Assembly: GCA_044892505.1 (NCBI GenBank)
Contig: CM097884.1
Location: 14,260,001-14,324,000 of the forward strand
Direction of reading: 5' to 3'
DNA length: 64,000 bases
Source of the DNA: Schmidtea nova
Taxonomy: Eukaryota
In this document: positions 35,184 to 52,241 of the stretch, one piece after another
How the letters are laid out: each line of letters begins with the position of its first letter
Position numbering within the stretch: the first letter of the stretch is position 1
Position numbers and translations under genes: made by a program
Notes under the pieces: generated by a model
Told to the model about the DNA's origin: nothing
Seen by the model: only the letters and a program-made list of their open reading frames with translations
Database searches by the model: none

Positions 35184-36048
35184 TGTTGGGTTATTGGTGT
35201 TAAGTCGGTAGTTTCTGACTCCGGTGTTCTCTTTCAATTACAAAATAAACAAGACCCAACACAATAACTTTCTTTATTTGTCAATTGATCACAACTCTTT
35301 TTATCACAAAAAGTTACGCCGGTTCTGCACTCTTCGCGTGAGGGTAGAACACCCAATGGGATATCTCCCTCTCTGACACGCAATAGATTAAGTATAAACT
35401 CTACTTTTGGTTTTCTTTCGACGTCTCCTTCAAATGTCTTCTAACGATTTGATTCACGTTGCCTACTTTTATTCTTCAATCGGTTGGCCTCGAAACTTTG
35501 ACTTTGACCCAATGGCAATTTCGGCACTTTGCTCTCCATTTTTATACCATCTCTGTGTTGTCATTCTGTCGGTGTAATTGGATATTATCGAAGCCGCTCG
35601 CTTGTAATCGGATCTGATTAGCTCTGCTTGGTCGTAACTGGATATTTGTCGTTTATGGTTTTTCCGGCTCCCCCCCGGGGCATTCAATTTAATTTGATAG
35701 TTTAATGGCCTCGCTGATGCCCCGGGTTTCCCACATCGCTCGGATCTCCTACAAGCTCGGGTTTCCCACTAGCTCGGGCTTCCTATAGAATAATTAATTA
35801 TTTTAATTAATTTGTATTTTCCAATTATTTCCTTCTGGGGGTCCCTTTTTATTTTTATATACCCATATTCGAATTCGTCTCGTTGTTTGGTATCCTCCCA
35901 TACCAGTTTCCCCCGCTTAAACTTTATTTTAATTTTTTATAAATTTTTAATTAATGTTTGAACATTAATTATTATTTTTTTCAATTTTATATTTTTATTG
36001 ATTTATGCATTTTTAAATTTATTTTCTGTGATTTTCACAACCCCAACA
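35184..36048 (-). repeat. 3-prime LTR
   Basis: About 3 substitutions versus 50925-51789 by eye. Confidence 0.97.
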
Positions 36049-36050
36049 TA

Positions 36051-36064
36051 TCTCCCCCTTTTTT
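36051..36064 (-). promoter_or_regulatory. Polypurine tract
   Basis: AAAAAAGGGGGAGA, 2 nt before the 3-prime LTR. Confidence 0.9.
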
Positions 36065-37973
36065 AAAGATTCGTCCTCGAATCTACATATACACATATTT
36101 TTGATCATAAATCCTGACAATGATTCTATAATAATAATAGTAATGATAATATCACGAATAATAGTAATAATAAGGATAATTATAGTAATAATTGCAATAA
36201 TACTGGTAGTAATGACAATGACCTAAGTATAATAATGATGATGATAATAGTATTAGTAGTACCACTATAACGATAATAATGGTAGTAATACTATTAATAA
36301 TAGTGATAATACTAGTATAATATTNNNNNNNNNNNNNNNNNNNNNNNNNNNNNNNNNNNNNNNNNNNNNNNNNNNNNNNNNNNNNNNNNNNNNNNNNNNN
36401 NNNNNNNNNNNNNNNNNNNNNNNNNNNNNNNNNNNNNNNNNNNNNNNNNNNNNNNNNNNNNNNNNNNNNNNNNNNNNNNNNNNNNNNNNNNNNNNNNNNN
36501 NNNNNNNNNNNNNNNNNNNNNNNNNNNNNNNNNNNNNNNNNNNNNNNNNNNNNNNNNNNNNNNNNNNNNNNNNNNNNNNNNNNNNNNNNNNNNNNNNNNN
36601 NNNNNNNNNNNNNNNNNNNNNNNNNNNNNNTTTTCAAAATAATTTGTTATTTTAATTTATTAATTTTAATTTAAACTTTAATTCTATAAATTAATTAAGG
36701 AAGGGAAATTGATATTCCAAATAAATTTTATTTTCATTGCCATCTCTTTTAAAGTGACGCTACTTTAATATAAATTATAAAAGAAATGGCCGCCTCAGCT
36801 TCTCAGATATCGCCGCCGCAATAAAAGGCGGTGAACTAGGATTTTTATCATTATTTTATTTCCAAATTTTGTAAGTAAATTTTTTTTGTTTTATTTACTT
36901 TATTAATATAAATTTTATGTTTTTCAATTTTATGTTTTCAATTGAAATTATAATATATTTTTTTATATACATATTTTTATATGTTTTTAAGTCAGATTAT
37001 TAACATGGAAAAACTGCAATGGCTTTATATTCATAACTTTGTTTTATTTATTTTTTTTTTCATCGATGCCATCTACAGGATTGTGTATATGAAAATCAGA
37101 GAATTATTGTTCCGAACAAGTGGAAAATAATACTGAAAAATGAATGCTTTTGCAAAAAGGCTATGTTGTAATCCGAAAAGACAGAGTGATTTGCAAAACA
37201 TGTTGGTAGATATTTATTTTATTTTATTTTTTTTGCATTAAATATATATGATTATAAATAAAAATAGTAATAACAATAAAATATATACTTTTTTAGATAT
37301 CGTTTTACAGGATAATGGTCTGTGTGTATAAGCATGTGTGTGAACGAATGTCGAATCGATAACATTATTCATTAGATAATTATTAATCACGAAAATTGTT
37401 TATGAAGAATTTTTTTTTCTTTTTTTTTTTTCGACTTTATAATTTTGTCATAACTATATTTGGTACTTTAAAATAATGAACCCAATTGACATTCGTTCAA
37501 ATTTAAAAATTGTGAAGTGCATGTTTTACAGAATAATCCTTTTCTTAGTATTATTTCTGTGTGTTTATCTCTATATTTGGAATACTTTATCGGACAAGCG
37601 ATAACTCATCAGAACATTTAGATTATTATGCCAACGATTTACTTTTGCCAATTGAAACAGAAATACAATAATAATAATAGAAATGACAATATTAATAACA
37701 ATAATAATGATAATAATAACAACACCAATNNNNNNNNNNNNNNNNNNNNNNNNNNNNNNNNNNNNNNNNNNNNNNNNNNNNNNNNNNNNNNNNNNNNNNN
37801 NNNNNNNNNNNNNNNNNNNNNNNNNNNNNNNNNNNNNNNNNNNNNNNNNNNNNNNNNNNNNNNNNNNTGTCCAGGAGAGTATGATCCCGGTGATTAAGGG
37901 CTGTTGGTTTTTATTTAGATTTAAAATTGTCATCATATAACAACAATGATACTAACAATAATAATAATAGTAA

Positions 37974-38004
<31 letters not shown>

Positions 38005-38875
38005 GATAATGACCCTAATACTACTAATGATAATAGAGTGATATTCTAATAATGGGATCACAATGTTGATGAATTTAATAATAATTGTCTTCGTCTTATG
38101 CTTTTATGATATTTATGATAATTTCATTTTATTATTATTTTATTCTGTTTTATTTATTTATTTTGTTTTTGCCAATGTTTGTTTTATTGATTCCATCATC
38201 CCTTTGACGATATAATACCAATAATAATCTGATTAATAACTGTAATATAATAATTGACAACTTTCAATCACTACTCAGGGAGATTGATTTAGAGTTTTTT
38301 GTTTTTATTTCGTCCTGAATTTTAATTATTGTATATAATGCTTATAAGGATCGAAATTTTCTTTTGATATCGCACTTATAGTGATCGTATAATGATAGTA
38401 ACATTAACAACAGTAATAATAATAATAATAATATTAATAATAATAATAATAATAACTGCCAACCTCTAATCGCTGTCCAGGAGAGTACACCCCCGGTGAT
38501 TAAAGGTTGTTGGTTTTTATTTAGCTTCAGAATTTTTATTTATTCAATTCTTTTTTGTGTTTTATTTATTTATTAAAATTTTTTTTTTTTTGTTGTTGTG
38601 GGGGTTTGACTGGTGGGCGCCATTTTAACGAACTGAGACAGAATTACTAAATTTATTTATAAATAATCACATATATAATTAATATATTTTTAGTTCATTT
38701 TGATTTCCAGCCGCTTTGCCCCATTTCGATATCTGATAATCGTTTCTTCTTTTTCATACACCACCCCGTTGATGGTCATTGTTTCCCCGACGTCGACGTT
38801 GGATGCTGAAGCTTTCCTTTTGCGATCCTCCTTTTGTTCTATTGGGCCATACTCCATCGATAATTGGATTCTTAT

Positions 38876-40138
38876 TTATTTTATGGATTCTATCCATTCG
38901 CAATTCTCTTCAATCTCCTCTAAATACATTTCAGTTGCCCATTTCAACTTTTGAATACTCTTTTCTGTTCCTGTATCTATTTCATCCACTTCCATGTTTG
39001 TCTCGTCTACGACCATTATCGTTCTTTCCGATCTGGGAATTTCAGATATTGATTCCATATGTTGTCTAGTTTTATACTCTTGCAATGAATACTTTTTTGA
39101 TGGCCCTATCTTAGGCATTGATATATCATCGATCCAAAGGTTTTCTAGTCCCAAATATATCTTCCGAATGCTTTTGACGTCCTCTAAAGCTGAGTGAATA
39201 CCCATTTGCATCTCTTCTCCATAGAGTTCCTTCATTATGGTTTTGAGCTTATACCATTCCCCTCTTCTTGTCACTCCTTTTAATTGCAACGCTTGAGCAG
39301 TAGCTAGATCCCGTATGCCATAAAGATGATTTACCCATATCCCTAGGAATTGTAATTCTGCATGTAGGTCATGTCCTACGAGTATTTTCCCGATTGTCAG
39401 TTTTTGGATTTCCTTCATCTCTTCGTACTGGTCTTTTTGATTTCGGCTTGCCACCTCCGTTATTCCATGGATGTTTGAGTTGAAATGTTTGAGTCTTCCT
39501 CTAGGTGTTAAGAAGACATTTTTCACAACTTTCCCGTAATAGTTCATAATGGCCACCGCCAAGGGAATCATCTTTCCAGTCATGCTGGTTCCATATTCGG
39601 CATCAATGAACAATATTTTGTTCCGAATTTCTTCTATACCCATTTCCCTCCGAATAAAGGACAATTTTCTTTTTAACATTTCCTTTGTTATTTGTAGGAG
39701 TTCAAGATTTTCTTTCTGCATTGGCTCCTCGCTGGGTACATCATCAATTTCGTTTTTGATCCTTGTTTCCACTACAATTGTGGCATCCTCGTTTGCTGCT
39801 CTTAATATTTTCCCGATTGCTGGCTCCTTGATTTTCCATGACGAAAGTTTTTTGATCTCCCACCATATTTGATCATTTTCGTCTAGAATTTCCACCGTCC
39901 CTCTGATGACGTGGATATAGTATTCGTCTTTATCTGATATTTTTAGTTCCTTTGTCATTTGAAATTTTGATTTTCTGTCTATAGTGAATACTTGGACTTT
40001 CATTTTTCTGTCGTCCAACCTTAGATAATTTGGAATTTGCAAATTGTTGACTATCTGGAATCTTCTTTGGCCGGCATGATTTCTCATCATCTTCAGATAG
40101 CTGTCATACGTTTCTCTGGCCCATTGTATCTGCTCCAT
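38876..40138 (-). CDS. 420-aa accessory protein with REX4/ISG20-like DEDDh 3-5 exonuclease domain
   Basis: ExoI ILFIDAE, FNSNIHGIT, ExoII ILVGHDLHAEL, IRDLA, KLKTI...ExoIII HSALEDV. Confidence 0.9.
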   Translation of the reverse strand: MEQIQWARETYDSYLKMMRNHAGQRRFQIVNNLQIPNYLRLDDRKMKVQVFTIDRKSKFQMTKELKISDKDEYYIHVIRGTVEILDENDQIWWEIKKLSSWKIKEPAIGKILRAANEDATIVVETRIKNEIDDVPSEEPMQKENLELLQITKEMLKRKLSFIRREMGIEEIRNKILFIDAEYGTSMTGKMIPLAVAIMNYYGKVVKNVFLTPRGRLKHFNSNIHGITEVASRNQKDQYEEMKEIQKLTIGKILVGHDLHAELQFLGIWVNHLYGIRDLATAQALQLKGVTRRGEWYKLKTIMKELYGEEMQMGIHSALEDVKSIRKIYLGLENLWIDDISMPKIGPSKKYSLQEYKTRQHMESISEIPRSERTIMVVDETNMEVDEIDTGTEKSIQKLKWATEMYLEEIEENCEWIESIK

Positions 40139-40323
40139 TTCTTACAAACGATTATAATTTAAATTTGAATTAATTCAATTTTGACGCTAGGACTAAGATG
40201 GAGTACCCAAAGGATACTGTCTTAGTTGGTAGCGGTATAAATAAAAATATAAAATTACCGATTTAATTGAAGTTTTCTTAGTTATTTGAAATTAATTTAA
40301 ATTTTATGATGTCTAAGTTTACC

Positions 40324-40390
40324 TTATATACCCCCCTTTTGATTTTTCTATCCCTTTTTCTACTCCCTCACTCTTTTAGTATTAGCCAAT
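40324..40390 (-). promoter_or_regulatory. Putative internal Pol II promoter for the exonuclease ORF
   Basis: ATTGG (CCAAT box) at 40386-40390 about 55 nt upstream of TATATAAG at 40323-40330, about 190 nt before the ATG. Confidence 0.45.
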
Positions 40391-40514
40391 CAAATCACTT
40401 TCCCACTTTCCCATGCCGAAGAGTGCAGATTCACATGAAACAATTATAAAAGAAAATGTCACTAGATACTAAACTATTAATCTACCATAATTGCATGCAA
40501 ATAATTGTATCTCA

Positions 40515-43500
40515 CTATACAAACGTCTCCTCGTAATCGATCCAAGGTCTCGGGGCCTCGGATTGATTCGTAGAATGTCTTTCAGTTTTTCGAATTTCAA
40601 AGATGATGACAGATATGAGAATAATGACAAATATTGTTATAATGATAATTGTTATTAATAATGTTACACATAGTAATTCATTTTCCGTAGGTGAGGCTGA
40701 TATAGTTTTATTGCTTGGATTTGACACCTTGATGTGAGCAGTTGTGATTCGCGTTGATTGATTTAACTTTTGTGGGTAACTGTCCATCTCAGTATATGAC
40801 ACTCGAACAAATTTGTCCTCTACCAAGGTTAATTGCCAAAGAGTGGAGTATTTGGCTCGCCGATAATACTTGATTTTTATTAGCACTATTTGAGAGTTTG
40901 ATTTTGACCGTAGTTGTCGGAAAGATAAGATCTTTGATTCATTTCGGTTCTCTAATATTCCTTGTACTTTTCCACAATAGTATAAAACAGCTCTCTGATT
41001 GGGGTACGTTTGACGGGTGACATTTATCGTCTGATCATACACATGAAAGATAACTCTGTTTGTTTCATTGATCAAGTTTATCGTGTGTTGACTGGAATGG
41101 ATTAGAACCCACTGATCGGTGCTGTCTGTTCCATTTTCGTACAACGACTTTTCAAAATATTGTATTTGAATATTATACATCTGAAATAATTTTAAATTAA
41201 CATATTTTATAAATGGTTTTCTGCTGTTCAGTGTATCGATAGCATGATTTTGAAAGACAGTTTTTACTTGCTGGGATTCATGAGAGTTCCAATATACATT
41301 AATTCCATTGATTACTGGTTCAATGGATACGCGGTCTTGTAGTCTTTTTGTCCATACATTGACACGTATTAGATCATGGACTCTTGTAAAATTATCTTTA
41401 AGATTTACTCGTGTTATTATCCAAGGGTATTTATAATTCATTGCTAATTCACGCGCGACATGTGTATTTTTGTTATAGTTTAATTTTACTGGGGGCTCGA
41501 AATAGTTCAGCAGATTATTTATCTCTATTTCTTCCGTCGCTTCGCAATAATAGATCCATACTATTTGGGTACATGTTGAATACACATCGATATTTTCTAA
41601 TAATGGGACTTTCTTCATTGCATATGCTGGGAATGTTCGTATTGCCGACGCACACAAAACATTGATCATCATCACTGTTGTTATCAACAACGTTTTACTT
41701 AGGTAGTTTAATTGAGTAGGGTTTTTTGTAAATTTTTGTTTAATTACTTTCTCTTTTTCGCCGTTACTTGGTTTTGACCTCAAGGGATATCTTTCTTCCA
41801 GCGGAACTTTCTTACATCGGTTTACATGAATGACAATCGTTCCCGCCTTTTTATTATTTTGTGGACGCAATTTTAAATTCGTCTCGGTTGTATCACACAC
41901 CAAATAAGGTCCTTTAAATGGTCGCTGTAGTTTGGTAGACAGCCCTTTCGTTGGCTCTGGTTTATTTATGTACACCAAATCTCCAACTTTAATATCATGT
42001 GCATGCGCACGTTTATCATAGCATTCTTTATATGCTTCTTGATTATGCCTTATTTTCAATCCCGCTTTGACCCATACTGATTGCAGTCTTTCCTGCATTA
42101 CTACTTTGTAATCGGATACGTCCATGTATTGTGAGATTGGTGGTTGAAACTTTAAGTCAATCGGCATATTGTTTCGTCGTAGGTACATAAGATAAAATGG
42201 TGTTTCACCGGTGCTTTCATTCACTGCATTTCGATATGCAAACAAACATGGCTTAATGAACAAATCCCAATCTTTTTGTTTCCTGTTTACATAAGACGAA
42301 ATCATGTTAATTAATGTTCCATTAAATCTGTCGACTAACCCATCTGTTTGTGGGTGATATGGGGATGTATTAAGTTTTAGGATTCCGAATAATTCGGTTA
42401 TAGATTTAAATAATTCGCTTTGAAAGTTTGTTCCTTGGTCTGTGAGCAATTTTCTTGGTGCTCCGTACCGAAATATGATGTTTTCTACAAATATTTTCGC
42501 AACAGTTTCTGCCTTTTGATTCTGCATTGCATATGCTTCCGGCCATTTTGTTAGGTAATCACAAAATACGATGATATATTTATTTCCATTGGTTGTTTCT
42601 GGTAGTGGACCAACAATATCCATTGCTGTCATTTCCATTGGTGCTACCGGCACGGTCATAGGTTTTAAAGGAACTTTTATTTTCCTTCCTGTATTTCGCC
42701 TGGTCAGACAAACTTCACAAGTGTGACACCATTGTCTGACGTCTTGCTCTATCGTGTCCCAGTAATATTTCTGTTTTAATCTTGATAATGTTTTTCGAGC
42801 AGATAAATGTCCTCCCAATGCCCCATCATGATACAACAACAGTAATGCTGTTCGATGTTTTGCCGGTACTACTATTAATAAGTTTTCATTTTTCACACAT
42901 TTCAACAACCCATCATGGATGACGTATTTATGTTTTTCTTCCGCAATGTGCTTCCAGTCACTTTCTCTTTTTATTGTGACAGCATGTTTCCGCAATTGAT
43001 TCAATTCAACATCGTTTTCCTGATCACCCTGTAATTCCTTCATATTATTTGCCGTTTTAATTGCCATAAATATCGTATTTTCATAATTTACTTCATTTTG
43101 AATAATATTTTCTTCAGGGATTCTCGACATTGCGTCCGCATTTCCATTTGACTTCCCCGTACGGTACTTAATTTCAAAATCGTACTCCTGTAATGCAATT
43201 GACCACCTAATCAGCTTGCTTGCCGAATCTCGATGCTTCATTAACCATTGTAATGGGTTATGATCCGTAAATACAATAAACTTTCTCCCAACCAAATATT
43301 GTCGAAAATTAGTTATCCCATATACTAATGCTAGCGTTTCTTTTTCGATTGTGGAATAATTTTTTTCATGTGGTTTTAATGAACGGCTTGCATAAGCAAT
43401 TACGTGATCTTTCTCACCTTCTACTTGCTGTCCAAGTACTGCTCCTAATGCAAAATTGCTTGCATCTGTCATCAGTATAAATGGTTTTTTGAAGTTCGGA

Positions 43501-46500
43501 CATCTCAATATTGGTTGTTTAATAAGACTCTCTTTTAATTTATCAAATGCTTCTTGTTGAGCTGTTACCCATTTGAATTTAGTCTGCTTTTTTAGCAACA
43601 TGTTTAAAGGTTGTGCTACATGCGAAAAATTCCTTATGAATTTCCTATAATAGCTCGCTAATCCAAGAAATTGTCGGACTTGATCCGCATCTTTGGGGAT
43701 CGGATACTTTTTGATCTTTTCTACATTTTCTGGGTTTGGTTGTAACCCTCTCCGTGAAATTATGTGCCCTACGTAAACAACTTCTGATTTTCCCCATTCA
43801 CATTTTGAAGGTTTTATTTTTAAATTGGCTTCTATTAGTCGTTTAAACACTATTTCCACATCTTTTAAGTGTCCCTGAAAATTGTTTGAAAATATTATTA
43901 TATCATCAATATAGACTAATGCATGTGGTATATCACGCAAAACAAAATTCATACCTCTCTGGAATGTAGCTGGTGCTCCCGTTAGACCGAATGGAAGCAC
44001 ATTAAACTCATATAGTCCTTTCCCATCTGAAAATGCCGTTTTTCTCCTGTCTTCCTCTTTGACTTTAAATTTGTTATATCCTTTGTTAAGATCGATTACT
44101 GTGAAGAATTGTACTTCTCCCATCTGATCAAACATTTCTTGCGGAACTGGTATAGGATATGTGTCTTTTCTTGTCACTTGGTTTAATTTCCGATAATCAA
44201 CACAAAATCGTAATTCACCGTCCTTCTTTTTCACTACTACTATTGACGATGAGAATGGTGATGAACTATCTCTTATTATTTTGAATTCCTTCATGGCTTT
44301 AATTTGCCGATCGCTTTCTTCTTGATGTATATATGGAATTCTGTACGGTCGTATTTTTATAGGAGTTTCATCAAGCAATGGTATTTCGTGTTCAATTATC
44401 TGAGTGAGTCCTAGATCATACTCATGTTTCGCGAATGCATTTTTATACCTTTTCAATAATGCCGCAAATTCTTGTCTTTGTGCCTCTGTTAGATCATCAC
44501 TTGTCACTTGTGGTTCTTTATAGATTTTGATATTTCTAGGTAGTTTTTGCACTTCCTCCCCTTTCATTTTTGACAGTTTTCCCAACTTTGTTTTGGGTTT
44601 CATTTGAACAGATTTTGTGCTACAATTAGCTATTCTTACTGGCACGGTTTTGTCTTTAATTTTTACTATTTCGTCACACATAGGTACGTCGTACTTTTCT
44701 ATTAGTTTTTGATTTGGTTCGAATATACACTCTTCTTCGGAAACATTTTCTACATTAGCGTAGTATATCACTTCGCTTTTTGGTGGTACTTCCAACGTTT
44801 GATTTAAAAAGACCTCTCCTGCTTCATGCACTACCTCATCAGTCTGCCTTTTTATTAATTTGCCCGTCTTTAAGTCCAGTGAGATTCCTTGTAATTGTTC
44901 CATGATATCCATGCCAATCAAACATTTGACAGGGCTTTTTCTCATTACTGATACCCAATGAATTACTTCCTGATTTCCTATATTCAACTTTACTTCTAGT
45001 TTTCCAATAATATTTAATACGTTATGCGTCATTGATTTAATAATTTTTGTTGTTGGCTTTATTTTCGCTTTTTCCTGTCTCGTTAAGAAACTCTCCGATA
45101 CTATACTGTGACTCGAGCCTGAATCCAATAACGCTTCCACTTTTCTTTCATTAAACTGTATGGATATTCTAGGTTGTTTTCCTCCAATTTCTATTGTCAT
45201 CAATGCGTAACTACATGGTAACCCAAGCATGTTCTTTCTTTCAATTTCGGCGCTTGATGGCTCAATCTTCTCTAGTTCGATTTTAATCTCATCAACTGGC
45301 TTCATTTCTCTCAACTTCTCACTTGGGTATATTGGAGCTGTTGGTATTAATGTCGGTGTGTACCATTTAGAAAGAGTGTCAATTCCTGTTAATTTTGGCA
45401 TTGGTTCAAGCAAGAACCTGGTTTCGGGTTCTATTCTACTTTTCATTATGCTCCTTCGAAAATTATTTTGCTCTGATCTGCCGCCACCGTTCTCATTATC
45501 AGGACCATTATTTTTATCCTCATGATCGCATAGTGATTCTTCGCTTTTCTGATCATTTCTCAATTGCGCTCGTACATTTGCCATTTCTTTGTATTGATGA
45601 CTTGTAATGAAGAATCTAGCCAAAAATGGAATACAACCAATCATCATTTTCCATGACCATCCGGAAATTGTATATATCCTGTGAGTGGACAATACTTGTG
45701 ATATTATCACCTTTACCGTTACTGCAATTACATAAATACCAATTAAACCTGCACAGGCTTGTCCCAAAAACATGAATTTTCCCCAAATCTTTTCCATTGT
45801 TTTGTAAGTAGCTCGTTTAAAATGATCAGGTGTCAGCAAGTATTCGTAGTTAACTTTCCCTTCTCCATTCGGCAATATGGTATCAATCATTTCTGAAATC
45901 ACGCGTTCCTTTTTTGACGGAAATAACAAATTTCTTTGGGCTTCTTCGATGTCTTCGCTCGCATACAAACCCATTTGTGCCATTTTATTCATTGATGTAA
46001 AATTTATTAAGTATTCCAAATTCGTCAATTCCAATTTATCTGGTGTTCTTACTCCTCGGTAATCTGGTAGCGCTATCCATGAATCTTGTGCTAAGCGATA
46101 TAATGGGGCTAATAATCGATTACATTGCAAGGTTTTTGGTTTAACTTGTTCCCCCAGCAGTATTCGGGTTATCGGTTCCATAAATCGTAGTTTCCCGCCA
46201 ACACTTACTGGCAATTCATTTGTACATTTCTCGTATTTTACTATTTTCACTGTAATTTCTTTGCATCGGTAACTGTACAGCGCTTCTCCAAAGATTCTAG
46301 CAAATACACCATTTTCTGAAATTAGCATGGGTGCTACTAAATTCGGGTTTGTAACCGCCATCGCCATTCGATTTCGAAGTATTTCTTTATTCAATTTACA
46401 ATCGTTCAAGATCATTTCTCTATATATGTTCTCCATGGTATTTTGGCTAAAATGAAATAAATAATCAATTTTATTATTAAAATAATGAGTTAGTTTTATA

Positions 46501-47462
46501 TCATCCCTGTGAATTCTCGTCTTCGCTTCATGTACAGTCGTTTTTGCCACATATACTCCTTTGTAATTTGTTACATAGACTGTTTGACCACATTTGCTCG
46601 TTATCTCCTTTTTAATAAAGCGCATGCTGTCCGTTGGCAAGGTTGACATTAAAACCGTCGCTGTTTGTCTTGTCCACAGTGGAATTGACCTTACTGTGCC
46701 ATTTTGTTTATAATTCATATTAAAGTTGTCTGGTCTCTCCCTAAATTGCTCTCCGGTTAACTCTTTGAAATTCATTGTTTTTAAATGAGCCAGGTTACAT
46801 ATATTGGTTTTAACATCGTAAACGAGGATTGACTCTCCCGTGTGACAACTAGTTTGCTTCATATTACAAAATGGATGAGTTTGTAGTTTTCCGGTATCAT
46901 CATCAAAAGATCCTTCGAACATTCTCAATTCGGTTAAGTATCCCTCTATTACCACTGTGTGTTTAATTATTTTCTCATTTATTTTATACGGTTCACCTTC
47001 ACAGTCACCGTCTGATTTCATCACTACCTTCACCACTAATGTTTCTCGAATTTGATGATTTAATTTCGCTTTTAATCGAATTTCAGGGCTGATTTTTAAT
47101 TCCCCCGTTTGGAAGGCTGTTAAGCAATTTTCCGGCAATACATCCACCGGTCGTGGAATGGCGTGCATTTTGATTAATGACGTATGGCTCCATTTACCAC
47201 AGAAGAATACAAAAGTGGTTCGTTTTACAATGCATTCTCTAACTTTGGTACGCCGTAAATCTGACTCTTGATTGACATAGTATTTTATTTCGTTTTCAAT
47301 CTTTAATTTTCGAGGGTATGCGTCTGGGCACTCTGACATATCAACCACTGAGTAAATTTTCCACATTTCGGTTTGTGAACAATCGTATGCCACCAATGAC
47401 GTCGTTTGTGCAATAACTGCACATAGAATAATCATCATGAACATTATCCAAGGGAATATCAT
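40515..47462 (-). CDS. env-pol: Env1-PR-RT-RNaseH-IN-Env2 polyprotein, 2315 aa
   Basis: Signal peptide + AYDC glycoprotein + TM; LLDSGS protease; YIDD RT; TDAS/EKE/TDH RNase H; HHCC + D,D integrase and GPY; second signal peptide, N-glycosylated ectodomain and C-terminal TM. Confidence 0.95.
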   Translation of the reverse strand: MIFPWIMFMMIILCAVIAQTTSLVAYDCSQTEMWKIYSVVDMSECPDAYPRKLKIENEIKYYVNQESDLRRTKVRECIVKRTTFVFFCGKWSHTSLIKMHAIPRPVDVLPENCLTAFQTGELKISPEIRLKAKLNHQIRETLVVKVVMKSDGDCEGEPYKINEKIIKHTVVIEGYLTELRMFEGSFDDDTGKLQTHPFCNMKQTSCHTGESILVYDVKTNICNLAHLKTMNFKELTGEQFRERPDNFNMNYKQNGTVRSIPLWTRQTATVLMSTLPTDSMRFIKKEITSKCGQTVYVTNYKGVYVAKTTVHEAKTRIHRDDIKLTHYFNNKIDYLFHFSQNTMENIYREMILNDCKLNKEILRNRMAMAVTNPNLVAPMLISENGVFARIFGEALYSYRCKEITVKIVKYEKCTNELPVSVGGKLRFMEPITRILLGEQVKPKTLQCNRLLAPLYRLAQDSWIALPDYRGVRTPDKLELTNLEYLINFTSMNKMAQMGLYASEDIEEAQRNLLFPSKKERVISEMIDTILPNGEGKVNYEYLLTPDHFKRATYKTMEKIWGKFMFLGQACAGLIGIYVIAVTVKVIISQVLSTHRIYTISGWSWKMMIGCIPFLARFFITSHQYKEMANVRAQLRNDQKSEESLCDHEDKNNGPDNENGGGRSEQNNFRRSIMKSRIEPETRFLLEPMPKLTGIDTLSKWYTPTLIPTAPIYPSEKLREMKPVDEIKIELEKIEPSSAEIERKNMLGLPCSYALMTIEIGGKQPRISIQFNERKVEALLDSGSSHSIVSESFLTRQEKAKIKPTTKIIKSMTHNVLNIIGKLEVKLNIGNQEVIHWVSVMRKSPVKCLIGMDIMEQLQGISLDLKTGKLIKRQTDEVVHEAGEVFLNQTLEVPPKSEVIYYANVENVSEEECIFEPNQKLIEKYDVPMCDEIVKIKDKTVPVRIANCSTKSVQMKPKTKLGKLSKMKGEEVQKLPRNIKIYKEPQVTSDDLTEAQRQEFAALLKRYKNAFAKHEYDLGLTQIIEHEIPLLDETPIKIRPYRIPYIHQEESDRQIKAMKEFKIIRDSSSPFSSSIVVVKKKDGELRFCVDYRKLNQVTRKDTYPIPVPQEMFDQMGEVQFFTVIDLNKGYNKFKVKEEDRRKTAFSDGKGLYEFNVLPFGLTGAPATFQRGMNFVLRDIPHALVYIDDIIIFSNNFQGHLKDVEIVFKRLIEANLKIKPSKCEWGKSEVVYVGHIISRRGLQPNPENVEKIKKYPIPKDADQVRQFLGLASYYRKFIRNFSHVAQPLNMLLKKQTKFKWVTAQQEAFDKLKESLIKQPILRCPNFKKPFILMTDASNFALGAVLGQQVEGEKDHVIAYASRSLKPHEKNYSTIEKETLALVYGITNFRQYLVGRKFIVFTDHNPLQWLMKHRDSASKLIRWSIALQEYDFEIKYRTGKSNGNADAMSRIPEENIIQNEVNYENTIFMAIKTANNMKELQGDQENDVELNQLRKHAVTIKRESDWKHIAEEKHKYVIHDGLLKCVKNENLLIVVPAKHRTALLLLYHDGALGGHLSARKTLSRLKQKYYWDTIEQDVRQWCHTCEVCLTRRNTGRKIKVPLKPMTVPVAPMEMTAMDIVGPLPETTNGNKYIIVFCDYLTKWPEAYAMQNQKAETVAKIFVENIIFRYGAPRKLLTDQGTNFQSELFKSITELFGILKLNTSPYHPQTDGLVDRFNGTLINMISSYVNRKQKDWDLFIKPCLFAYRNAVNESTGETPFYLMYLRRNNMPIDLKFQPPISQYMDVSDYKVVMQERLQSVWVKAGLKIRHNQEAYKECYDKRAHAHDIKVGDLVYINKPEPTKGLSTKLQRPFKGPYLVCDTTETNLKLRPQNNKKAGTIVIHVNRCKKVPLEERYPLRSKPSNGEKEKVIKQKFTKNPTQLNYLSKTLLITTVMMINVLCASAIRTFPAYAMKKVPLLENIDVYSTCTQIVWIYYCEATEEIEINNLLNYFEPPVKLNYNKNTHVARELAMNYKYPWIITRVNLKDNFTRVHDLIRVNVWTKRLQDRVSIEPVINGINVYWNSHESQQVKTVFQNHAIDTLNSRKPFIKYVNLKLFQMYNIQIQYFEKSLYENGTDSTDQWVLIHSSQHTINLINETNRVIFHVYDQTINVTRQTYPNQRAVLYYCGKVQGILENRNESKILSFRQLRSKSNSQIVLIKIKYYRRAKYSTLWQLTLVEDKFVRVSYTEMDSYPQKLNQSTRITTAHIKVSNPSNKTISASPTENELLCVTLLITIIIITIFVIILISVIIFEIRKTERHSTNQSEAPRPWIDYEETFV

Positions 47463-47564
47463 CGTCTTCCTTAGTTTTGGACTTACTCTTCCGTTTAATT
47501 GCCTTTGCGGTGCATCGTTTTCCGGTTTCTTTCTTTTCTTTATTATCGATAAATTTAATGTTTT

Positions 47565-50500
47565 CTACCCTCCACGCTCTCTCAGCCAATTACTTAAAGA
47601 CTCATTTATTAGTCGAGCCGCAATGTCAATTAACTTATCAAGCTTGTCTGACTTTGTAAATGCATGAATACTGATCTCTGAAACAACGTAGGTTAGAATT
47701 ATTAGCACTACTTCTTTATCGATCCCATTTTCGATCAACTTTTCTATTACTTCACAGTTACAAAAGCTATCCTCTTTGCCCAATTTCCGCACTACTCCTG
47801 GAAGTCTGATTTTCACTTCATCTACTATTCCTTTCAATTCCTCTTCCGTTTCTGTCTCTATTTTTAGGATTGGGTATACGACTCCAACCAAATTTCTTAT
47901 TACGTCACTTGTTTCTTCAACTTCCTGCTCTAATTTTACTAAGGTTTTCTTCATCTCATACAATGTTCTAGTCTTCGTATTCGCACTTTTTATTTCACCT
48001 TTTTCGATATTCGTATCTTCAATAACTGCCATTTCTGCTGTCTGAGCATTATTATTAACCCTCTTTTCCCCCTTATAATCATCAGTAACTATTTCAATTT
48101 CGCTTTCCTTTATTTCTTCTGTTTGCTCATCTGTGTCTGAAAATTCAACTTTGTCAAGCATCCTCGAATTATATTCTTTATTTGCGATTATGCGATTTAT
48201 CAAATACCCTTGACTTCCATTAGTACTTAAATACCCATATTCATCCAGTTCCTGTGGCACACATCCGTAGTCATATAAATATTCATCGTCATCCAATTCT
48301 TCCCCTTTATATCTCAGCACTATAATTCCATCTTTACCTAACATTTCCGCAGCTCTTTTACGCACTTTTCGAACTTTCGTACACCAGTGTTCCTCTACAT
48401 ACTCAGTTTTCCCAATATCTTCATATTCTATTGCAATTGTTAACGAATTTAACTCAACTCTATCTTTTCTAAGCTCTTTACCCAATTTTCTCATTATTCT
48501 CTTTAAACATTGTCTATATCCCGTTCTTCTAAACAAACAGGGTCGTATCGCATTAGCAAGTTCTAATTTTTCCTTTTGCCCAAATTCAGATTCCTCTATT
48601 AATTTTACTATTTCTTTAATTTCGTTTTCGTCACCAATACATAAAACATCATTTAGCTCCTTTACTATTTGCATCGGATCACTTCTTGTCATTTCACTGT
48701 TACTCATCATACTGGCTATTTGTAATTCATTTTTGTTCCCTGGTATAAGACCACAATCTATTAAATATTCATCATTTTCTAAATCTCTATTTTTAAACTT
48801 TAATTCGACTACCCAGCCTTCACATTTCTCTCTTAGTCTCCTTTTTAAATCTTTTACGCGATCATAGGCTTCACAACGACAAGTAATCACATTTTTATCA
48901 TTTTCATTAACAACATCAATAGAAATAAAATCTAACCATTTATTTTCTCGAAACGCTTTCCCAAATTTTCTCATCAATTCTTTAATTTCTTCTCTATTTG
49001 TTACATTTATTTGATAATAATTAGCACACAAATTAATCACGCCTTTCAATTTTCTCATACTTAACGACATTTGACTCAGGCTTTTAACCGATACCAATAT
49101 TTTAGATGATTCTTCCACGCTAGCTTCTAGTAATTTCTCAAGTCTTTTCATCATCATGGTAGCCTTTTCGCTTTCCAAATCGTCTTTTGTACACCCAGTT
49201 GTCGTGTCAGCTTCTGTCATGTCTTGCTGCGATCCATACATCATGTGATTATCCAATTCATCATCAGATTCAAACTTGGACATTAAACGATCTAAACGTC
49301 GACCCATTTCTTTCACTTGGTTTTCAATCTTTTCATTGAAATCATCTGATTGAACAAAAGCCACGTTGTCTGTCTGCAGTTTATCATTTTGAAATCTTAT
49401 TGATTTTTTTAATATAGGTTTCTGAAATTTGTCGACATTCCTCGGGCATGATCTAGCCATGTGTCCATACCCTCTACATGAATGACATTGAATTTGACCT
49501 TGAAGGTTCACTCTATCTCTTTGTGGGGATGGCGAAGTTGATGGAGACCTCGATCTAGCAAAACAATTCCGAGAGACATGTCCTTTCCTTCCACAATTGT
49601 AACATTGCACATTATCGTTATTACGCTGATCATTAAAATTTAGTTTATTGAAACTTTTCTCACCATTACCCTTCAACCAATCTGGCCACATTCGTTTTGG
49701 GCTTCGTTGAACGTTGTTTTTAGACCAGCATTGATTGCTGTTATGTCCCATCCTTTGACAATAATCACACTGAATTGGAGTTGGACTTTTTGGAGACCTA
49801 TTTTTGAACCAACATTGATTAACATGATGTCCTATTCGTTGGCAATGGCTGCATTGAATTGGCCTCTCTTTTTCATCAATTTGAACATTTGTTGATTTAT
49901 TTGGCTCAAATCTTTGTCTAAACGTTGGTGATGGACTAATTGATTGCTGAAGCCGATTGTTTTTGACTGGAGTTATGGACCGTTCTCTGGGTTCATTGAT
50001 GATGGCAAACGATTCTGATTTTGGCTGTGAACTTTTCAGATTTAACTCAATTTTCATCGCCTTTTTGATTAACTCATCAAAGTTATTGAAGTCCACATAA
50101 CATAATGCCTTTTTGATCTCCTTTTTGACTCCCGTTAAGAACTGGTCTTGTAGCAATTCTTTCACCTGCTTTGCCACTTCAATCTGTTCCGGCTTTACTT
50201 CGAATGCTTTCTCTGCAAGAGTAGTCAAGTGGTACGCAAATTCACTTACCGATTCCTCTGATTTTTGCACTCGATTATAGAACTTCTGCCGCATTATCCG
50301 TTTTATATCCCCTCCAATTAGTTTCGCGGCTAAGGCATCTTTCAATTTCGTCCAGTCATTCGCAATTGTTCTTTTGTCAATTTGTTGCCAGGCTTCTCTC
50401 GCTGCTCCCTTCAGATATAGTGGCAATCTTTGCACCATTGTCGCTTGGCTCCATCCATAGGCTGTGGCGTACATGTAGTAATCCGCCATAAAATCAACGA

Positions 50501-50648
50501 ATTCCACTGGATCACCGCCATACTGATTTACTGGCAGTTTCTGGCAGCTAGCATAGTCATTGCCATTGCCGTTGCTGGTGGACATGGGCGTATCATCCTG
50601 ATTGTTTGTATTACTCATTTTTGTTTCTGGTTGTTTATTACTTCTCAA
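47565..50648 (-). CDS. gag: Gag, 1027 aa, with 4 CCHC knuckles and an extended C-terminus with two ubiquitin-like domains
   Basis: Capsid-like LPLYLKGAAREAW...Q...ESVSEF...FLTG; four CX2CX4HX4C at 49450-49856; Ubl-like repeats at 48718-48930 and 48245-48450. Confidence 0.92.
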   Translation of the reverse strand: MRSNKQPETKMSNTNNQDDTPMSTSNGNGNDYASCQKLPVNQYGGDPVEFVDFMADYYMYATAYGWSQATMVQRLPLYLKGAAREAWQQIDKRTIANDWTKLKDALAAKLIGGDIKRIMRQKFYNRVQKSEESVSEFAYHLTTLAEKAFEVKPEQIEVAKQVKELLQDQFLTGVKKEIKKALCYVDFNNFDELIKKAMKIELNLKSSQPKSESFAIINEPRERSITPVKNNRLQQSISPSPTFRQRFEPNKSTNVQIDEKERPIQCSHCQRIGHHVNQCWFKNRSPKSPTPIQCDYCQRMGHNSNQCWSKNNVQRSPKRMWPDWLKGNGEKSFNKLNFNDQRNNDNVQCYNCGRKGHVSRNCFARSRSPSTSPSPQRDRVNLQGQIQCHSCRGYGHMARSCPRNVDKFQKPILKKSIRFQNDKLQTDNVAFVQSDDFNEKIENQVKEMGRRLDRLMSKFESDDELDNHMMYGSQQDMTEADTTTGCTKDDLESEKATMMMKRLEKLLEASVEESSKILVSVKSLSQMSLSMRKLKGVINLCANYYQINVTNREEIKELMRKFGKAFRENKWLDFISIDVVNENDKNVITCRCEAYDRVKDLKRRLREKCEGWVVELKFKNRDLENDEYLIDCGLIPGNKNELQIASMMSNSEMTRSDPMQIVKELNDVLCIGDENEIKEIVKLIEESEFGQKEKLELANAIRPCLFRRTGYRQCLKRIMRKLGKELRKDRVELNSLTIAIEYEDIGKTEYVEEHWCTKVRKVRKRAAEMLGKDGIIVLRYKGEELDDDEYLYDYGCVPQELDEYGYLSTNGSQGYLINRIIANKEYNSRMLDKVEFSDTDEQTEEIKESEIEIVTDDYKGEKRVNNNAQTAEMAVIEDTNIEKGEIKSANTKTRTLYEMKKTLVKLEQEVEETSDVIRNLVGVVYPILKIETETEEELKGIVDEVKIRLPGVVRKLGKEDSFCNCEVIEKLIENGIDKEVVLIILTYVVSEISIHAFTKSDKLDKLIDIAARLINESLSNWLRERGG

Positions 50649-50902
50649 TTCGTAATATGGTCGGTTTGGTACAACTTTTTCTCTTCTAAATTTTAATATA
50701 TCAATTATAAATTTTACCTTTTATTTTAATTTCAACAGTATAAATCTTTCCACAATTATCAACAAACTTTTATCAACCCTTGATTCGATTTACTGACTTT
50801 TTTCTTTTAATCAATTTCACAATTTCCAAACTTTTTAGCAACTTTTAATTTCTTTTTGCCAATAAATATTCGATTTCTTTTTGCAACGCTTCACCGACTT
50901 TG

Positions 50903-50920
50903 ATCACGTCGGGCTCACCA
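50903..50920 (-). promoter_or_regulatory. Primer-binding site, tRNA-Trp
   Basis: TGGTGAGCCCGACGTGAT, 4 nt after the 5-prime LTR; complements the metazoan tRNA-Trp 3-prime end (ATCACGTCGGGGTCACCA) at 17 of 18 positions. Confidence 0.85.
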
Positions 50921-50924
50921 AATA

Positions 50925-51789
50925 TGTTGGGTTATTGGTGTTAAGTCGGTAGTTTCTGACTCCGGTGTTCTCTTTCAATTACAAAATAAACAAGACCCAA
51001 CACAATAACTTTCTTTATTTGTCAATTGATCACAACTCTTTTTATCACAAAAAGTTACGCCGGTTCTGCACTCTTCGCGTGAGGGTAGAACACCCAATGG
51101 GATATCTCCCTCTCTGACACGCAATAGATTAAGTATAAACTCTACTTTTGGTTTTCTTTCGACGTCTCCTTCAAATGTCTTCTAACGATTTGATTCACGT
51201 TGCCTACTTTTATTCTTCAATCGGTTGGCCTCGAAACTTTGACTTTGACCCAATGGCAATTTCGGCACTTTGCTCTCCGTTTTTATACCATCTCTGTGTT
51301 GTCATTCTGTCGGTGTAATTGGATATTATCGAAGCCGCTCGCTTGTAATCGGATCTGATTAGCTCTGCTTGGTCGTAACTGGATATTTGTCGTTTATGGT
51401 TTTTCCGGCTCCCCCCCGGGGCATTCAATTTAATTTGATAGTTTAATGGCCTCGCTGATGCCCCGGGTTTCCCACATCGCTCGGATCTCCTACAAGCTCG
51501 GGTTTCCCACTAGCTCGGGCTTCCTATAGAAAAATTAATTATTTTAATTAATTTGTATTTTCCAATTATTTCCTTCTGGGGGTCCCTTTTTATTTTTATA
51601 TACCCATATTCGAATTCGTCTCGTTGTTTGGTATCCTCCCATACCAGTTTCCCCCGCTTAAACTTTATTTTAATTTTTTATAAATTTTTAATTAATGTTT
51701 GAACATTAATTATTATTTTTTTCAATTTTATATTTTTATTGATTTATGCAATTTTAAATTTATTTTCTGTGATTTTCACAACCCCAACA
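50925..51789 (-). repeat. 5-prime LTR (TATAAAA at 51281-51287, AATAAA at 51014-51019)
   Basis: Near-identical to 35184-36048; followed by the PBS. Confidence 0.97.
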
Positions 51790-52010
51790 ATTATTATGAT
51801 TAATGTAACTTCTTATTCTTCTTTTATCATGTTGGTTTAAAATTTCTTTCCTCCCACGCTTTAACTGCTTTAACGCTTAAACGGCTTTTTCAATTTTTTG
51901 TCAATTACTTATTAAAACCAGTCTGATTGTGTCTGTTTGGATCTACACCTATCGAAAAGTTATGAGTCCGCAATTACTCATCATTTACTTGTGAAAACGA
52001 AGACATTTGT
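51790..52010 (-). mobile_element. Tc1-like transposon, 5-prime part (HTH)
   Basis: GRKEILNQHDKRRIRSYINHN joins in frame across the TSD to NVVGVKSSASSIIEEF at 35183. Confidence 0.85.

Positions 52011-52217: not shown

Positions 52218-52241
<24 letters not shown>

What the first reader, a model, noticed from the sequence alone, without database searches (positions are those of the whole stretch)
35184..51789. Intact retrovirus-like Ty3/gypsy element with gag-env-pol-env2 order plus an exonuclease
Seen: complete LTR/PBS/PPT/TSD, about 3 LTR mismatches, three unbroken ORFs. Known: enveloped LTR elements (retroviruses, errantiviruses, env-bearing BEL/Pao) normally place env after pol as a separate ORF. 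Here a fusogen sits between gag and pol, a second glycoprotein follows integrase, and a host-like nuclease is carried downstream. Inference: a recently active and possibly infectious invertebrate retrovirus lineage that acquired its envelope independently. I do not recognise this architecture, but cannot rule out a prior description.
Basis: partly seen in the sequence, partly recalled or inferred. Interest (0 to 1): 0.95.

Follow-up and report, generated by a model that had tools for sequence, protein, structure and literature searches.

The report
Burro-like gag-env-pol endogenous retrovirus
This is a real, recently inserted 16.6-kb retrovirus-like element whose unusual gene order (a viral membrane-fusion protein sitting in frame between gag and pol) has already been described in planarians, nematodes and bryozoans, so only its extra nuclease gene and membrane-protein tail are possibly new.

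Summary
It is a minus-strand Ty3/gypsy element at 35184-51789 with 865-bp TG..CA LTRs (3 mismatches), a 4-bp target duplication, PBS, PPT and very long open frames. Both assembly gaps lie in an AT-rich, non-coding 3' stretch, far from any domain junction.

The layout is Gag (four zinc knuckles), ubiquitin-like repeats, a Bcl-2-like domain, a class III fusion glycoprotein (chuvirus G / herpesvirus gB fold), PR-RT-RNaseH-IN, and a membrane-anchored, sequon-rich tail. A separate ISG20-like DEDDh exonuclease gene follows.

At least ten independent metagenome contigs keep the same collinear order, often as one uninterrupted ORF, so it is not an assembly chimera. Three of them also carry the exonuclease downstream of pol.

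The claim of an unrecognised architecture fails. In-frame env between a BCL2-like motif and PR was described for planarian Burro elements (PMC6431247). GAG-ENV-POL with gB-type Env was described in nematodes, bryozoans and flatworms (PMC13524379).

"Intact" is qualified. One in-frame stop splits a frame that is continuous in relatives, and one integrase catalytic position departs from all 16 relatives.

The lineage-conserved DEDDh exonuclease and the post-integrase membrane tail may be new. Interest is moderate.

The parts
35180..35183 (.). target-site duplication, left copy (ATTA)
   Evidence: same 4 bases at 51790-51793
35184..36048 (-). 3' LTR (865 bp, TG..CA)
   Evidence: ungapped alignment to 50925-51789 with 3 mismatches
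36051..36064 (-). polypurine tract (A6G5AGA), 2 nt upstream of the 3' LTR
36065..38875 (-). AT-rich non-coding 3' region holding both assembly gaps (36325-36630, 37730-37867); true length unknown
   Evidence: 23-27% GC, ATA-type simple repeats abut both gaps, no coding similarity to relatives
38876..40138 (-). ORF3, 420 aa: N-terminal domain of unknown fold plus an ISG20-like DEDDh 3'-5' exonuclease
   Evidence: homologues sit downstream of pol in L002, L003 and L004
39122..39631 (-). exonuclease domain (ORF3 residues about 170-339)
   Evidence: PF00929 at 30.2 bits (cut-off 24); aligned to 7yw5 and 1wlj; the five catalytic residues are invariant in 4 elements
40515..50648 (-). one long reading frame (gag through pol and tail), given as a single part; interrupted by one in-frame stop. 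First ATG at 50618.
   Evidence: the same region is one uninterrupted ORF in P0155-P0161
50184..50423 (-). Gag capsid-like domain (Retrotrans_gag)
   Evidence: PF03732 E 6e-8
49446..49853 (-). four CCHC zinc knuckles (nucleocapsid)
47463..49445 (-). accessory region between nucleocapsid and fusogen: coiled/acidic stretches, two ubiquitin-like repeats, Bcl-2-like domain, linker
   Evidence: Weak PF11976 hit. PF00452 Bcl-2 E 4.6e-4, below cut-off, also found in P0005 and P0018. A Trp..Gly-Gly-Trp motif lies upstream of G in several relatives. The ubiquitin-like module is shared by at least 7 relatives.
45507..47462 (-). class III fusion glycoprotein (signal peptide, ectodomain, TM anchor at 45693-45761)
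   Evidence: PF24664 E 1.4e-85. AF2 model pLDDT 87. Foldseek: herpesvirus gB E 2e-15, chu-like virus glycoproteins E 1e-43.
44886..45179 (-). retropepsin (DSG)
43758..44234 (-). reverse transcriptase (YIDD)
43182..43571 (-). RNase H
42351..42869 (-). integrase zinc-binding and core domains; the C-terminal domain runs to about 41763. One catalytic position departs from all relatives.
40518..41696 (-). post-integrase membrane module ('env2'): hydrophobic segment 41640-41696, sequon-rich ectodomain of about 317 aa, TM 40590-40679, 24-aa tail
   Evidence: No homologue. AF2 pLDDT 37. Most relatives have an analogous hydrophobic segment plus C-terminal TM.
50902..50920 (-). primer-binding site (starts TGG), 4 nt downstream of the 5' LTR
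50925..51789 (-). 5' LTR
51790..51793 (.). target-site duplication, right copy (ATTA)

Best explanation
Window 35184-51789 (minus strand) is one young insertion of a Ty3/gypsy-type endogenous retrovirus. It belongs to the lineage that carries a captured class III fusion glycoprotein (chuvirus-G / herpesvirus-gB fold) in frame between gag and pol. This is the layout described for planarian Burro elements and for the GAG-ENV-POL 'errantiviruses' of nematodes, bryozoans and flatworms.

Shown:
- The termini, the domain order, the fold of the fusogen and the intact DEDDh motifs.
- The same order recurs in diverged relatives.
- The exonuclease gene is linked downstream of pol in four elements.

Inferred mechanism:
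- The long frame is made as a membrane-threaded polyprotein.
- Gag, the ubiquitin-like repeats and the Bcl-2-like domain stay in the cytosol.
- The signal sequence puts the fusogen ectodomain into the ER lumen, and its TM anchor returns the chain to the cytosol.
- PR, RT, RNase H and IN therefore hang on the cytosolic side as the fusogen's 'tail'.
- A second hydrophobic segment re-inserts the chain, so the sequon-rich tail domain is lumenal and is held by a last TM.
- Signal peptidase and the element's own protease would then separate the parts.
- Pol would reach assembling particles through its link to Gag and/or to the envelope protein.

The accessory modules (ubiquitin-like, Bcl-2-like, exonuclease) most likely act on host pathways: ubiquitin/ESCRT use, cell death, and nucleic-acid or small-RNA defence, or on 3'-end processing.

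This copy carries one in-frame stop where relatives are continuous, and one departure at an integrase catalytic position. It may therefore be a recently inserted but no longer autonomous copy.
For: Termini, target duplication, PBS and PPT.

Domains. PF24664 covers 5-632 of 653 profile positions (E 1.4e-85), followed by PR, RT, RNase H and IN in gypsy order.

Fold: the model has pLDDT 87. It matches gB structures at probability 1.0 over more than 600 columns and chu-like virus glycoproteins at E 1e-43, TM 0.63.

Lineage:
- One search found 1420 G relatives. The closest (36-41% identity) are 1.3-3.2-kaa proteins.
- Searches show collinear G-PR-RT-RH-IN in P0006, P0015, P0158, P0159 and P0160.
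- They show gag, the ubiquitin-like region, G and pol in one ORF in P0155-P0161.

Exonuclease:
- Homologues at 34-36% identity lie just downstream of pol in L002, L003 and L004.
- The one in L002 lies inside an LTR-like repeat pair.
- The catalytic D, E, D, H and D are invariant across the four.
- 13 further copies are in two JGI samples.

Topology:
- Signal peptide, TM, second hydrophobic segment and final TM are in the right order.
- There are 7 sequons in the 279 residues counted within the ~317-residue tail ectodomain, against 8 in the 1358 cytosolic residues.
- Relatives' tails show the same hydrophobic segment plus C-terminal TM pattern.

Literature: PMC6431247 and PMC13524379.
Against: - No RNA, protein or copy-number data. 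The polyprotein topology and all accessory functions are inference.
- The Bcl-2 and ubiquitin-like assignments rest on sub-threshold Pfam hits plus a shared motif.
- Several Burro hallmarks were looked for and not found in this element: MATH, BIR, ankyrin, Smc, and dUTPase between PR and RT. It is also half Burro's size.
- No Burro/GYPSM1 or nematode reference sequence was available to measure relatedness.
- The host is unidentified.
- Among relatives the gag and G-pol frames are variously fused, in the same frame with several stops, or in different frames. There is therefore no single conserved expression rule.
- The 3' region holds two gaps of unknown length.
Confidence: 0.8

Rival explanations
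1. One reading: a previously undescribed retrovirus lineage that gained its envelope independently, with an architecture not seen before, intact and possibly infectious.
For: - The envelope type differs from the F-type Env of insect errantiviruses.
- The frames are open and the LTRs nearly identical.
- I found no paper that reports a DEDDh exonuclease or a post-integrase membrane tail in such elements.
Against: - In-frame env between gag (with a PF11976 domain and BCL2-like) and PR is described for Burro (PMC6431247).
- The GAG-ENV-POL order with gB-type Env is described in three phyla (PMC13524379) and in nematodes (Sacco et al. 2022, cited there).
- The envelope is shared by a diverged lineage.
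- There is one in-frame stop and one catalytic-site departure.
Confidence: 0.07
2. Assembly chimera or nested insertion: a chuvirus-derived endogenous viral element, or a second transposon, has been joined to a gypsy element by mis-assembly or by insertion.
For: The scaffold has N gaps inside the element. The element is long for a gypsy element (16.6 kb).
Against: - The gaps are more than 7 kb from the G-pol junction, which lies inside one 2315-codon ORF of called bases.
- The same order and frame occur in at least ten independent contigs from other samples.
- There are no internal LTRs or extra target duplications.
Confidence: 0.02
3. The single stop between the gag-side and G-pol-side frames is a normal gene boundary rather than a lesion. 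G-pol would be translated from its own AUG on a spliced or internally promoted mRNA, or by low-level readthrough. Pol would then be made independently of Gag and brought to particles only as the cytosolic tail of the fusogen.
For: - The second ORF starts with an AUG exactly at the signal peptide, with a purine at -3.
- The 34 codons between the stop and that AUG are open in the same frame (about 8% chance by my estimate).
- Internal env promoters exist in Oikopleura Tor elements (PMC4402516).
- In L001 and L004, gag and G-pol are also separate ORFs.
Against: - Seven relatives read straight through this region, within a conserved motif.
- The RNA after the stop has no stable structure (z = +1.0) and no known readthrough context.
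- Only one copy is available.
Confidence: 0.3
4. The exonuclease gene is a recent, passenger capture of a host gene with no role in the element.
For: Its best solved relatives are cellular ISG20-family enzymes. LTR elements are known to pick up ORFs downstream of pol (PMC6431247; PMC5408684).
Against: - Homologues hold the same position in three elements whose pol is only 41-49% identical.
- All five catalytic residues are invariant.
- The N-terminal domain is also shared in further copies.
Together these mean long-term retention under selection.
Confidence: 0.08

Closest known systems
Burro / GYPSM1 giant gypsy-like LTR retrotransposons of planarians (Jurka 2007; Grohme et al. 2018; re-annotated by Arkhipova and Yushenova 2019, PMC6431247)
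   Same: - Gag with a retrotrans_gag domain and several CCHC knuckles.
- A PF11976 ubiquitin/SUMO-like motif, then a BCL2-like motif.
- A mononegavirus-type fusion glycoprotein in frame directly before PR-RT-RH-IN.
- Extra accessory ORFs.
- An AT-rich invertebrate host is plausible.
   Different: - Total length is 16.6 kb against more than 30 kb.
- No MATH, BIR, ankyrin, Smc or AIR1 domains, and no dUTPase between PR and RT, were detected here.
- An ISG20-like exonuclease gene and a post-integrase membrane tail are present here and are not mentioned for Burro.
- Sequence relatedness was not measured because no reference was at hand.
GAG-ENV-POL 'errantiviruses' with HSV/gB-type Env in Nematoda, Bryozoa and Platyhelminthes (Chary and Hayashi, eLife 2026, PMC13524379; nematode elements of Sacco et al. 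2022, J Gen Virol 103:1739)
   Same: Ty3/gypsy pol; a class III fusogen placed between gag and pol; LTRs and PBS; often young multi-copy insertions.
   Different: - Those surveys looked for three ORFs and did not report accessory exonuclease, Bcl-2-like or ubiquitin-like modules, or a membrane tail after integrase.
- The Sacco paper could not be read here.
Mosquito BEL/Pao elements with a captured Chuviridae glycoprotein (Dezordi et al. 2020, PMC7642597)
   Same: The same glycoprotein family (chuvirus-like, class III) recruited by an LTR retroelement.
   Different: A different retroelement superfamily (BEL/Pao, not Ty3/gypsy). That paper was not read in detail here.
Bdelloid rotifer Juno/Vesta LTR elements with a DEDDy exonuclease ORF3 (Rodriguez et al. 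2017, PMC5408684)
   Same: A DEDD-superfamily 3'-5' exonuclease carried as an accessory ORF downstream of pol in Ty3/gypsy-like elements, with catalytic residues kept.
   Different: That one is DEDDy (RNase D-like). This one is DEDDh (RNase T / ISG20-like) with its own N-terminal domain, and the elements are unrelated in layout.
Oikopleura Tor elements (PMC4402516)
   Same: Invertebrate gypsy-like elements with a membrane glycoprotein env. Some use an internal promoter for env.
   Different: In Tor, env lies after pol, and the Env described there is a different, furin-cleaved glycoprotein.

Membership tests
Ty3/gypsy (Metaviridae) LTR retroelement | Paired LTRs with TG..CA ends, a 4-6 bp target duplication, PBS and PPT | tested here: met
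Ty3/gypsy (Metaviridae) LTR retroelement | Pol domain order PR-RT-RNaseH-IN with gypsy-type RT_RNaseH and Integrase_H2C2 domains | tested here: met
   No BEL/Pao or copia families hit. Named relatives are Ty3/gypsy polyproteins.
Ty3/gypsy (Metaviridae) LTR retroelement | RT/IN phylogenetic placement among reference gypsy clades | not testable with these tools
   No GyDB, Repbase or Dfam reference set was available.
GAG-ENV-POL elements with gB-type Env (PMC13524379; Sacco 2022) | env located between gag and pol | tested here: met
GAG-ENV-POL elements with gB-type Env (PMC13524379; Sacco 2022) | Env has the class III (gB-like) fold | tested here: met
GAG-ENV-POL elements with gB-type Env (PMC13524379; Sacco 2022) | Host in Nematoda, Bryozoa or Platyhelminthes | tested here: inconclusive
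   The host Es2 protein is 85% identical to one UniParc-only protein and about 32% to all named metazoans. The window is about 30% GC. A planarian is plausible but not shown.
Burro (planarian giant gypsy) | env in frame between a BCL2-like motif and PR | tested here: met
   One in-frame stop lies in the accessory region of this copy.
Burro (planarian giant gypsy) | PF11976 ubiquitin/SUMO-like motif upstream of the BCL2-like motif | tested here: inconclusive
   PF11976 gives E 0.0016-0.006, below cut-off, and was not recovered on a cut piece. Relatives give weak ubiquitin or UBX hits at the same place.
Burro (planarian giant gypsy) | MATH_TRAF_C, BIR, ankyrin, Smc and AIR1 modules in the polyprotein | tested here: not met
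   No such Pfam hits in the window's ORFs. Ankyrin is present in relatives P0151, L001 and L005.
Burro (planarian giant gypsy) | dUTPase between PR and RT | tested here: not met
   no family hit in the 221-aa PR-RT spacer
Burro (planarian giant gypsy) | Total length above 30 kb | tested here: not met
   16,606 bp, with two gaps of estimated size
PF24664 / class III viral fusion glycoproteins | Full-length match to the family profile, conserved cysteines, signal peptide and C-terminal TM anchor | tested here: met
   288 bits, cut-off 27; 12 near-invariant Cys present
PF24664 / class III viral fusion glycoproteins | Membrane-fusion activity | not tested
   No sequence test exists, and no functional test is proposed here.
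DEDDh exonucleases (RNase_T / ISG20-like) | Family profile match above threshold, with all of D, E, D, H and D present | tested here: met
   (30.2 bits, cut-off 24)
Bcl-2 family | Profile match above the curated threshold | tested here: inconclusive
   21.1 bits against a cut-off of 31.4, covering profile positions 7-99 of 100. There are independent sub-threshold hits at the same position in P0005 and P0018 and a shared Trp..Gly-Gly-Trp motif in several relatives.
Retroviral or viral envelope protein (for the post-integrase tail, 'env2') | Homology or fold shared with a known envelope protein | tested here: not met
   No hit among 5.8 billion proteins, in the PDB, in Pfam or among relatives' tails. 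The AF2 model has pLDDT 37, so no fold search was run.
Retroviral or viral envelope protein (for the post-integrase tail, 'env2') | Type-I-like membrane glycoprotein features | tested here: met
   A hydrophobic segment, 7 sequons in the 279 residues counted within the ~317-residue tail ectodomain, a strong C-terminal TM and a short basic tail

The most novel reading that the evidence does not exclude
This lineage of retroviruses makes a flavivirus-style membrane-threaded polyprotein. Pol is delivered as the cytosolic tail of a class III fusogen and is followed by a second, fast-evolving surface glycoprotein. The lineage also keeps a set of anti-host modules as conserved parts of its genome: ubiquitin-like and Bcl-2-like domains, and a DEDDh exonuclease that blunts small-RNA or nucleic-acid defence. 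The exonuclease and the post-integrase membrane protein would be new accessory gene classes for LTR retroelements.
Probability: 0.25. Interest if true: 0.7.

Novelty: new variant of a known kind. Interest (0 to 1): 0.4.

Why it matters
The headline (env between gag and pol) is known, so this does not open a new category.

It still adds three things:
- A compact, nearly complete example of the Burro-like / gB-type gag-env-pol lineage.
- Evidence that the lineage is widespread in environmental sequence data, where at least one member is mislabelled as bacterial.
- Evidence that two accessory features are retained across diverged members: an ISG20-like exonuclease gene and a membrane-anchored tail after integrase.

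If these are confirmed, the lineage would be a useful case for two questions: how retroelements assemble host-interaction modules, and how Pol can be packaged when it is fused to an envelope protein rather than only to Gag.

Tried and rejected
- Exact look-ups of ORF3 and of the host Es2 protein found nothing.
- Rfam and tRNA scans of the window found nothing that could name the host or the primer tRNA.
- PDB sequence searches with the fusogen, the Gag extension and the tail gave only noise or weak ubiquitin-like hits.
- The tail had no homologue and its single-sequence model was unusable, so I ran no fold search on it.
- A readthrough-promoting RNA structure after the stop was looked for and not found.
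- Oikopleura Tor elements were considered as the known family and rejected, because their env lies after pol.
- The Sacco 2022 and Grohme 2018 papers and the eLife supplements were not held.
- One paper search was wasted on a term that matched 'nerve'.
- The sigma-70 promoter scan of the LTR is not meaningful for a eukaryotic element and is not used.
- No copy of the element, solo LTR or fragment occurs elsewhere in the window.

Full report
1. Observation

Two 865-bp direct repeats, 35184-36048 and 50925-51789, align without gaps and differ at 3 positions. They begin TG and end CA. The same four bases, ATTA, flank the pair at 35180-35183 and 51790-51793.

All long frames are on the minus strand, so 50925-51789 is the 5' LTR. 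Four bases inside it lies a 19-nt primer-binding site that starts TGG (50902-50920). A 14-nt polypurine tract lies two bases before the 3' LTR (36051-36064).

2. The gaps

This was tested first, as asked. The N runs 36325-36630 and 37730-37867 both fall in the 2.8 kb between the stop of the last gene (38876) and the polypurine tract.

- That stretch is 23-27% GC.
- ATA-type simple repeats run up to both edges of both gaps.
- It has no coding similarity to relatives.
- The two ORFs that the ORF listing reports there read through N and are artefacts.
- No long ORF and no domain junction is near a gap. The fusogen-pol junction is more than 7 kb away, inside one ORF of called bases.

Continuity across the gaps cannot be proven from the window. 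The LTR pair and the matching target duplication argue for a single insertion. The length of the 3' region is uncertain.

3. Anatomy

Pfam, the translations and hydropathy and sequon counts give the following order, 5' to 3'.

- A capsid-like Gag domain and four CCHC knuckles.
- An accessory region of about 600 residues.
- A signal peptide and a full-length match to PF24664 (viral fusion glycoprotein of Monjiviricetes, E 1.4e-85) with a TM anchor.
- Retropepsin, RT, RNase H and integrase.
- A hydrophobic segment, an ectodomain of about 317 residues with 7 N-glycosylation sequons, a strong TM helix and a 24-residue tail.
- After a 376-nt spacer, a 420-codon gene. Its residues 170-339 match RNase_T above Pfam's threshold.

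For the 420-codon gene, the best solved relatives are ISG20L2 and ISG20, and the D-E-D-D-h residues are in place.

The fusogen is therefore not a separate gene. It is the N-terminal 650 residues of the ORF that also encodes pol, and the 'second glycoprotein' is that ORF's C-terminal tail. The gag-side ORF and the G-pol ORF are in the same frame, separated by one stop and 34 open codons.

4. The fusogen

An AlphaFold2 model built on 64 sequences has mean pLDDT 87.

- Against the PDB, the best matches are herpesvirus gB ectodomains (E 2e-15, probability 1.0, more than 600 aligned columns).
- Against predicted viral structures, the best are chu-like virus glycoproteins (E 1e-43, TM 0.63).

It is a class III fusion protein of the chuvirus-G kind. 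This is the kind that PMC13524379 groups under 'HSV/gB-type ENV'.

5. Is the order real?

A full HMMER scan of 1.84 billion representatives with the fusogen found 1420 relatives.

- Those of 22-27% identity are stand-alone proteins of about 650 aa.
- The closest (36-41% identity) sit inside proteins of 1,300-3,200 aa.

BLAST against the window's ORFs and a second search show collinear G-PR-RT-RH-IN in at least ten independent contigs. In P0155-P0161, gag, the accessory region, G and pol are one uninterrupted ORF of 2,700-3,900 codons. Pol identity to the window is 41-52%. An assembly chimera or a nested insertion is excluded.

6. Accessory parts

(a) Exonuclease.
- Homologues at 34-36% identity lie just downstream of pol in L002, L003 and L004.
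- In L002 the gene lies inside an LTR-like repeat pair.
- The five catalytic residues are invariant in all four.
- Thirteen more copies, several including the N-terminal domain, occur on short contigs of two JGI samples.
- It is a retained gene of the lineage, not a one-off passenger.

(b) Tail.
- It has no homologue, and the single-sequence model is unusable (pLDDT 37).
- Most relatives nevertheless have, after integrase, a hydrophobic segment followed 250-350 residues later by a strong C-terminal TM. One has weak Ig-domain hits there.
- The architecture is conserved and the sequence is not.

(c) Gag extension.
- There are weak hits to a SUMO/ubiquitin-like family, PF11976.
- There are weak hits to Bcl-2: 21 bits against a threshold of 31, covering the whole profile.
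- Independent sub-threshold Bcl-2, ubiquitin or UBX hits occur at the same place in relatives.
- The ubiquitin-like module is shared by at least 7 relatives.
- A Trp..Gly-Gly-Trp motif lies just upstream of the fusogen in several relatives.

7. What is known

- Arkhipova and Yushenova 2019 (PMC6431247) describe Burro/GYPSM1 of planarians as one giant polyprotein. It has Gag with CCHC knuckles, a PF11976 motif, a BCL2-like motif, then an env related to mononegavirus fusion glycoproteins 'in-frame between gag and pol', plus other modules and accessory ORFs.
- Chary and Hayashi (PMC13524379) report GAG-ENV-POL elements with gB-type Env in Nematoda, Bryozoa and Platyhelminthes. They cite Sacco et al. 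2022 for the nematode case.
- Looked for and not found in this element: MATH, BIR, ankyrin and Smc modules, and a dUTPase between PR and RT. At 16.6 kb it is half Burro's size. I therefore file it as Burro-like, not as Burro.
- I found no report of a DEDDh exonuclease or a post-integrase membrane tail in these elements. The nearest precedent is the DEDDy exonuclease ORF3 of bdelloid Juno/Vesta elements (PMC5408684).

8. Host

The neighbouring Es2/ESS-2 gene (29068-30288) is 85% identical to a single UniParc-only protein and about 32% to every named metazoan homologue. The window is about 30% GC. A planarian would fit both points, and also the Burro likeness, but this is inference. Nothing in the window looked human.

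9. How it most likely works (inference)

The order of signal peptide, TM, hydrophobic segment and TM gives a self-consistent topology. Gag and the accessory domains are cytosolic, the fusogen ectodomain is lumenal, the pol enzymes are cytosolic, and the sequon-rich tail domain is lumenal. This suggests a membrane-threaded polyprotein cut by signal peptidase and by the element's protease. The accessory modules plausibly act on ubiquitin-dependent budding, cell death, and RNA or DNA 3' ends or small-RNA defence. None of this is shown.

10. State of this copy (counts only)

- The long frame has one in-frame stop in a region that seven relatives read through.
- The RNA after the stop shows no readthrough-type structure.
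- Integrase has one departure at a catalytic position where all 16 relatives examined agree.
- Otherwise pol has 19 private departures at columns invariant in 12 relatives, within the range of other divergent members.
- PR and RT motifs are present.
- From the LTR divergence I estimate about two dozen substitutions since insertion in the internal region, so a few lesions would be expected.
- Whether the two changes are lesions or lineage features needs sister copies.

11. Slips, stated as required

- Before I realised that the boundary between the first two long ORFs might be a break rather than a gene end, I wrote the ORF bounds and the identity of that stop into notes.
- My scripts printed its context and motif strings with residue numbers.
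- In my working I also considered what the position might once have encoded.
- In my working I recalled short motif strings of ubiquitin, Bcl-2 and ISG20 from memory.

12. Verdict

This is a real, young, nearly complete Burro-like gag-env-pol endogenous retrovirus. The main architectural claim is already in the literature. The conserved exonuclease and the membrane tail are the parts worth following up.

Noticed in passing
window 29068-30288 (-): Single-exon host gene for nuclear protein Es2/ESS-2 (PF09751, E 1e-42). It is 85% identical to one UniParc-only protein (UPI00060B294A) and only about 32% to every named metazoan homologue, so the host lineage is poorly represented in annotated databases.
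   Followed up: partly
L004 (P0151), L005, L001 14902-17118: Relatives carry two to seven retropepsin-like domains in tandem, and ankyrin repeats, inside or just after the polyprotein. The window element has a single protease.
   Followed up: partly
L002 16872-18689: A protein-primed DNA polymerase B gene (PF03175, the Polinton/Maverick type) lies just outside the element's LTR-like repeat.
   Followed up: no
L001 17034-24564: Bacterial-type genes (Bac_luciferase, NAD-binding, MnhB antiporter) sit next to a eukaryotic retroelement on one metagenome contig. This is either a chimeric assembly or horizontally acquired genes in the host.
   Followed up: no
P0006 (NCBI HBK71150.1): A 2627-aa G-pol polyprotein of this lineage is filed in NCBI as a hypothetical protein of a Flavobacteriaceae MAG. 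It is probably a mis-binned eukaryotic contig.
   Followed up: no
P0161 residues 2673-2748: The post-integrase tail of one relative gives weak hits to several immunoglobulin-domain families. This hints that these tails are variable surface-protein modules.
   Followed up: no
L004 22895-23398: A RING-finger (zf-C3HC4_3) ORF follows the exonuclease gene in one relative. Burro is reported to carry a RING-type AIR1 motif.
   Followed up: no
window 52000-56000: The flank beyond the 5' LTR is strongly C-rich on the plus strand (GC skew -0.33 to -0.38), with no long ORFs and only short simple repeats. Unexplained.
   Followed up: partly
window 35723-35783 and 51464-51524: A 17-nt unit repeated 3.5 times lies inside each LTR.
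   Followed up: no
L006-L018 (JGI Ga0209893, Ga0073919): Thirteen short contigs from two samples encode ORF3-like exonucleases, several including the N-terminal domain. The copy number suggests a repeated, element-borne gene.
   Followed up: partly
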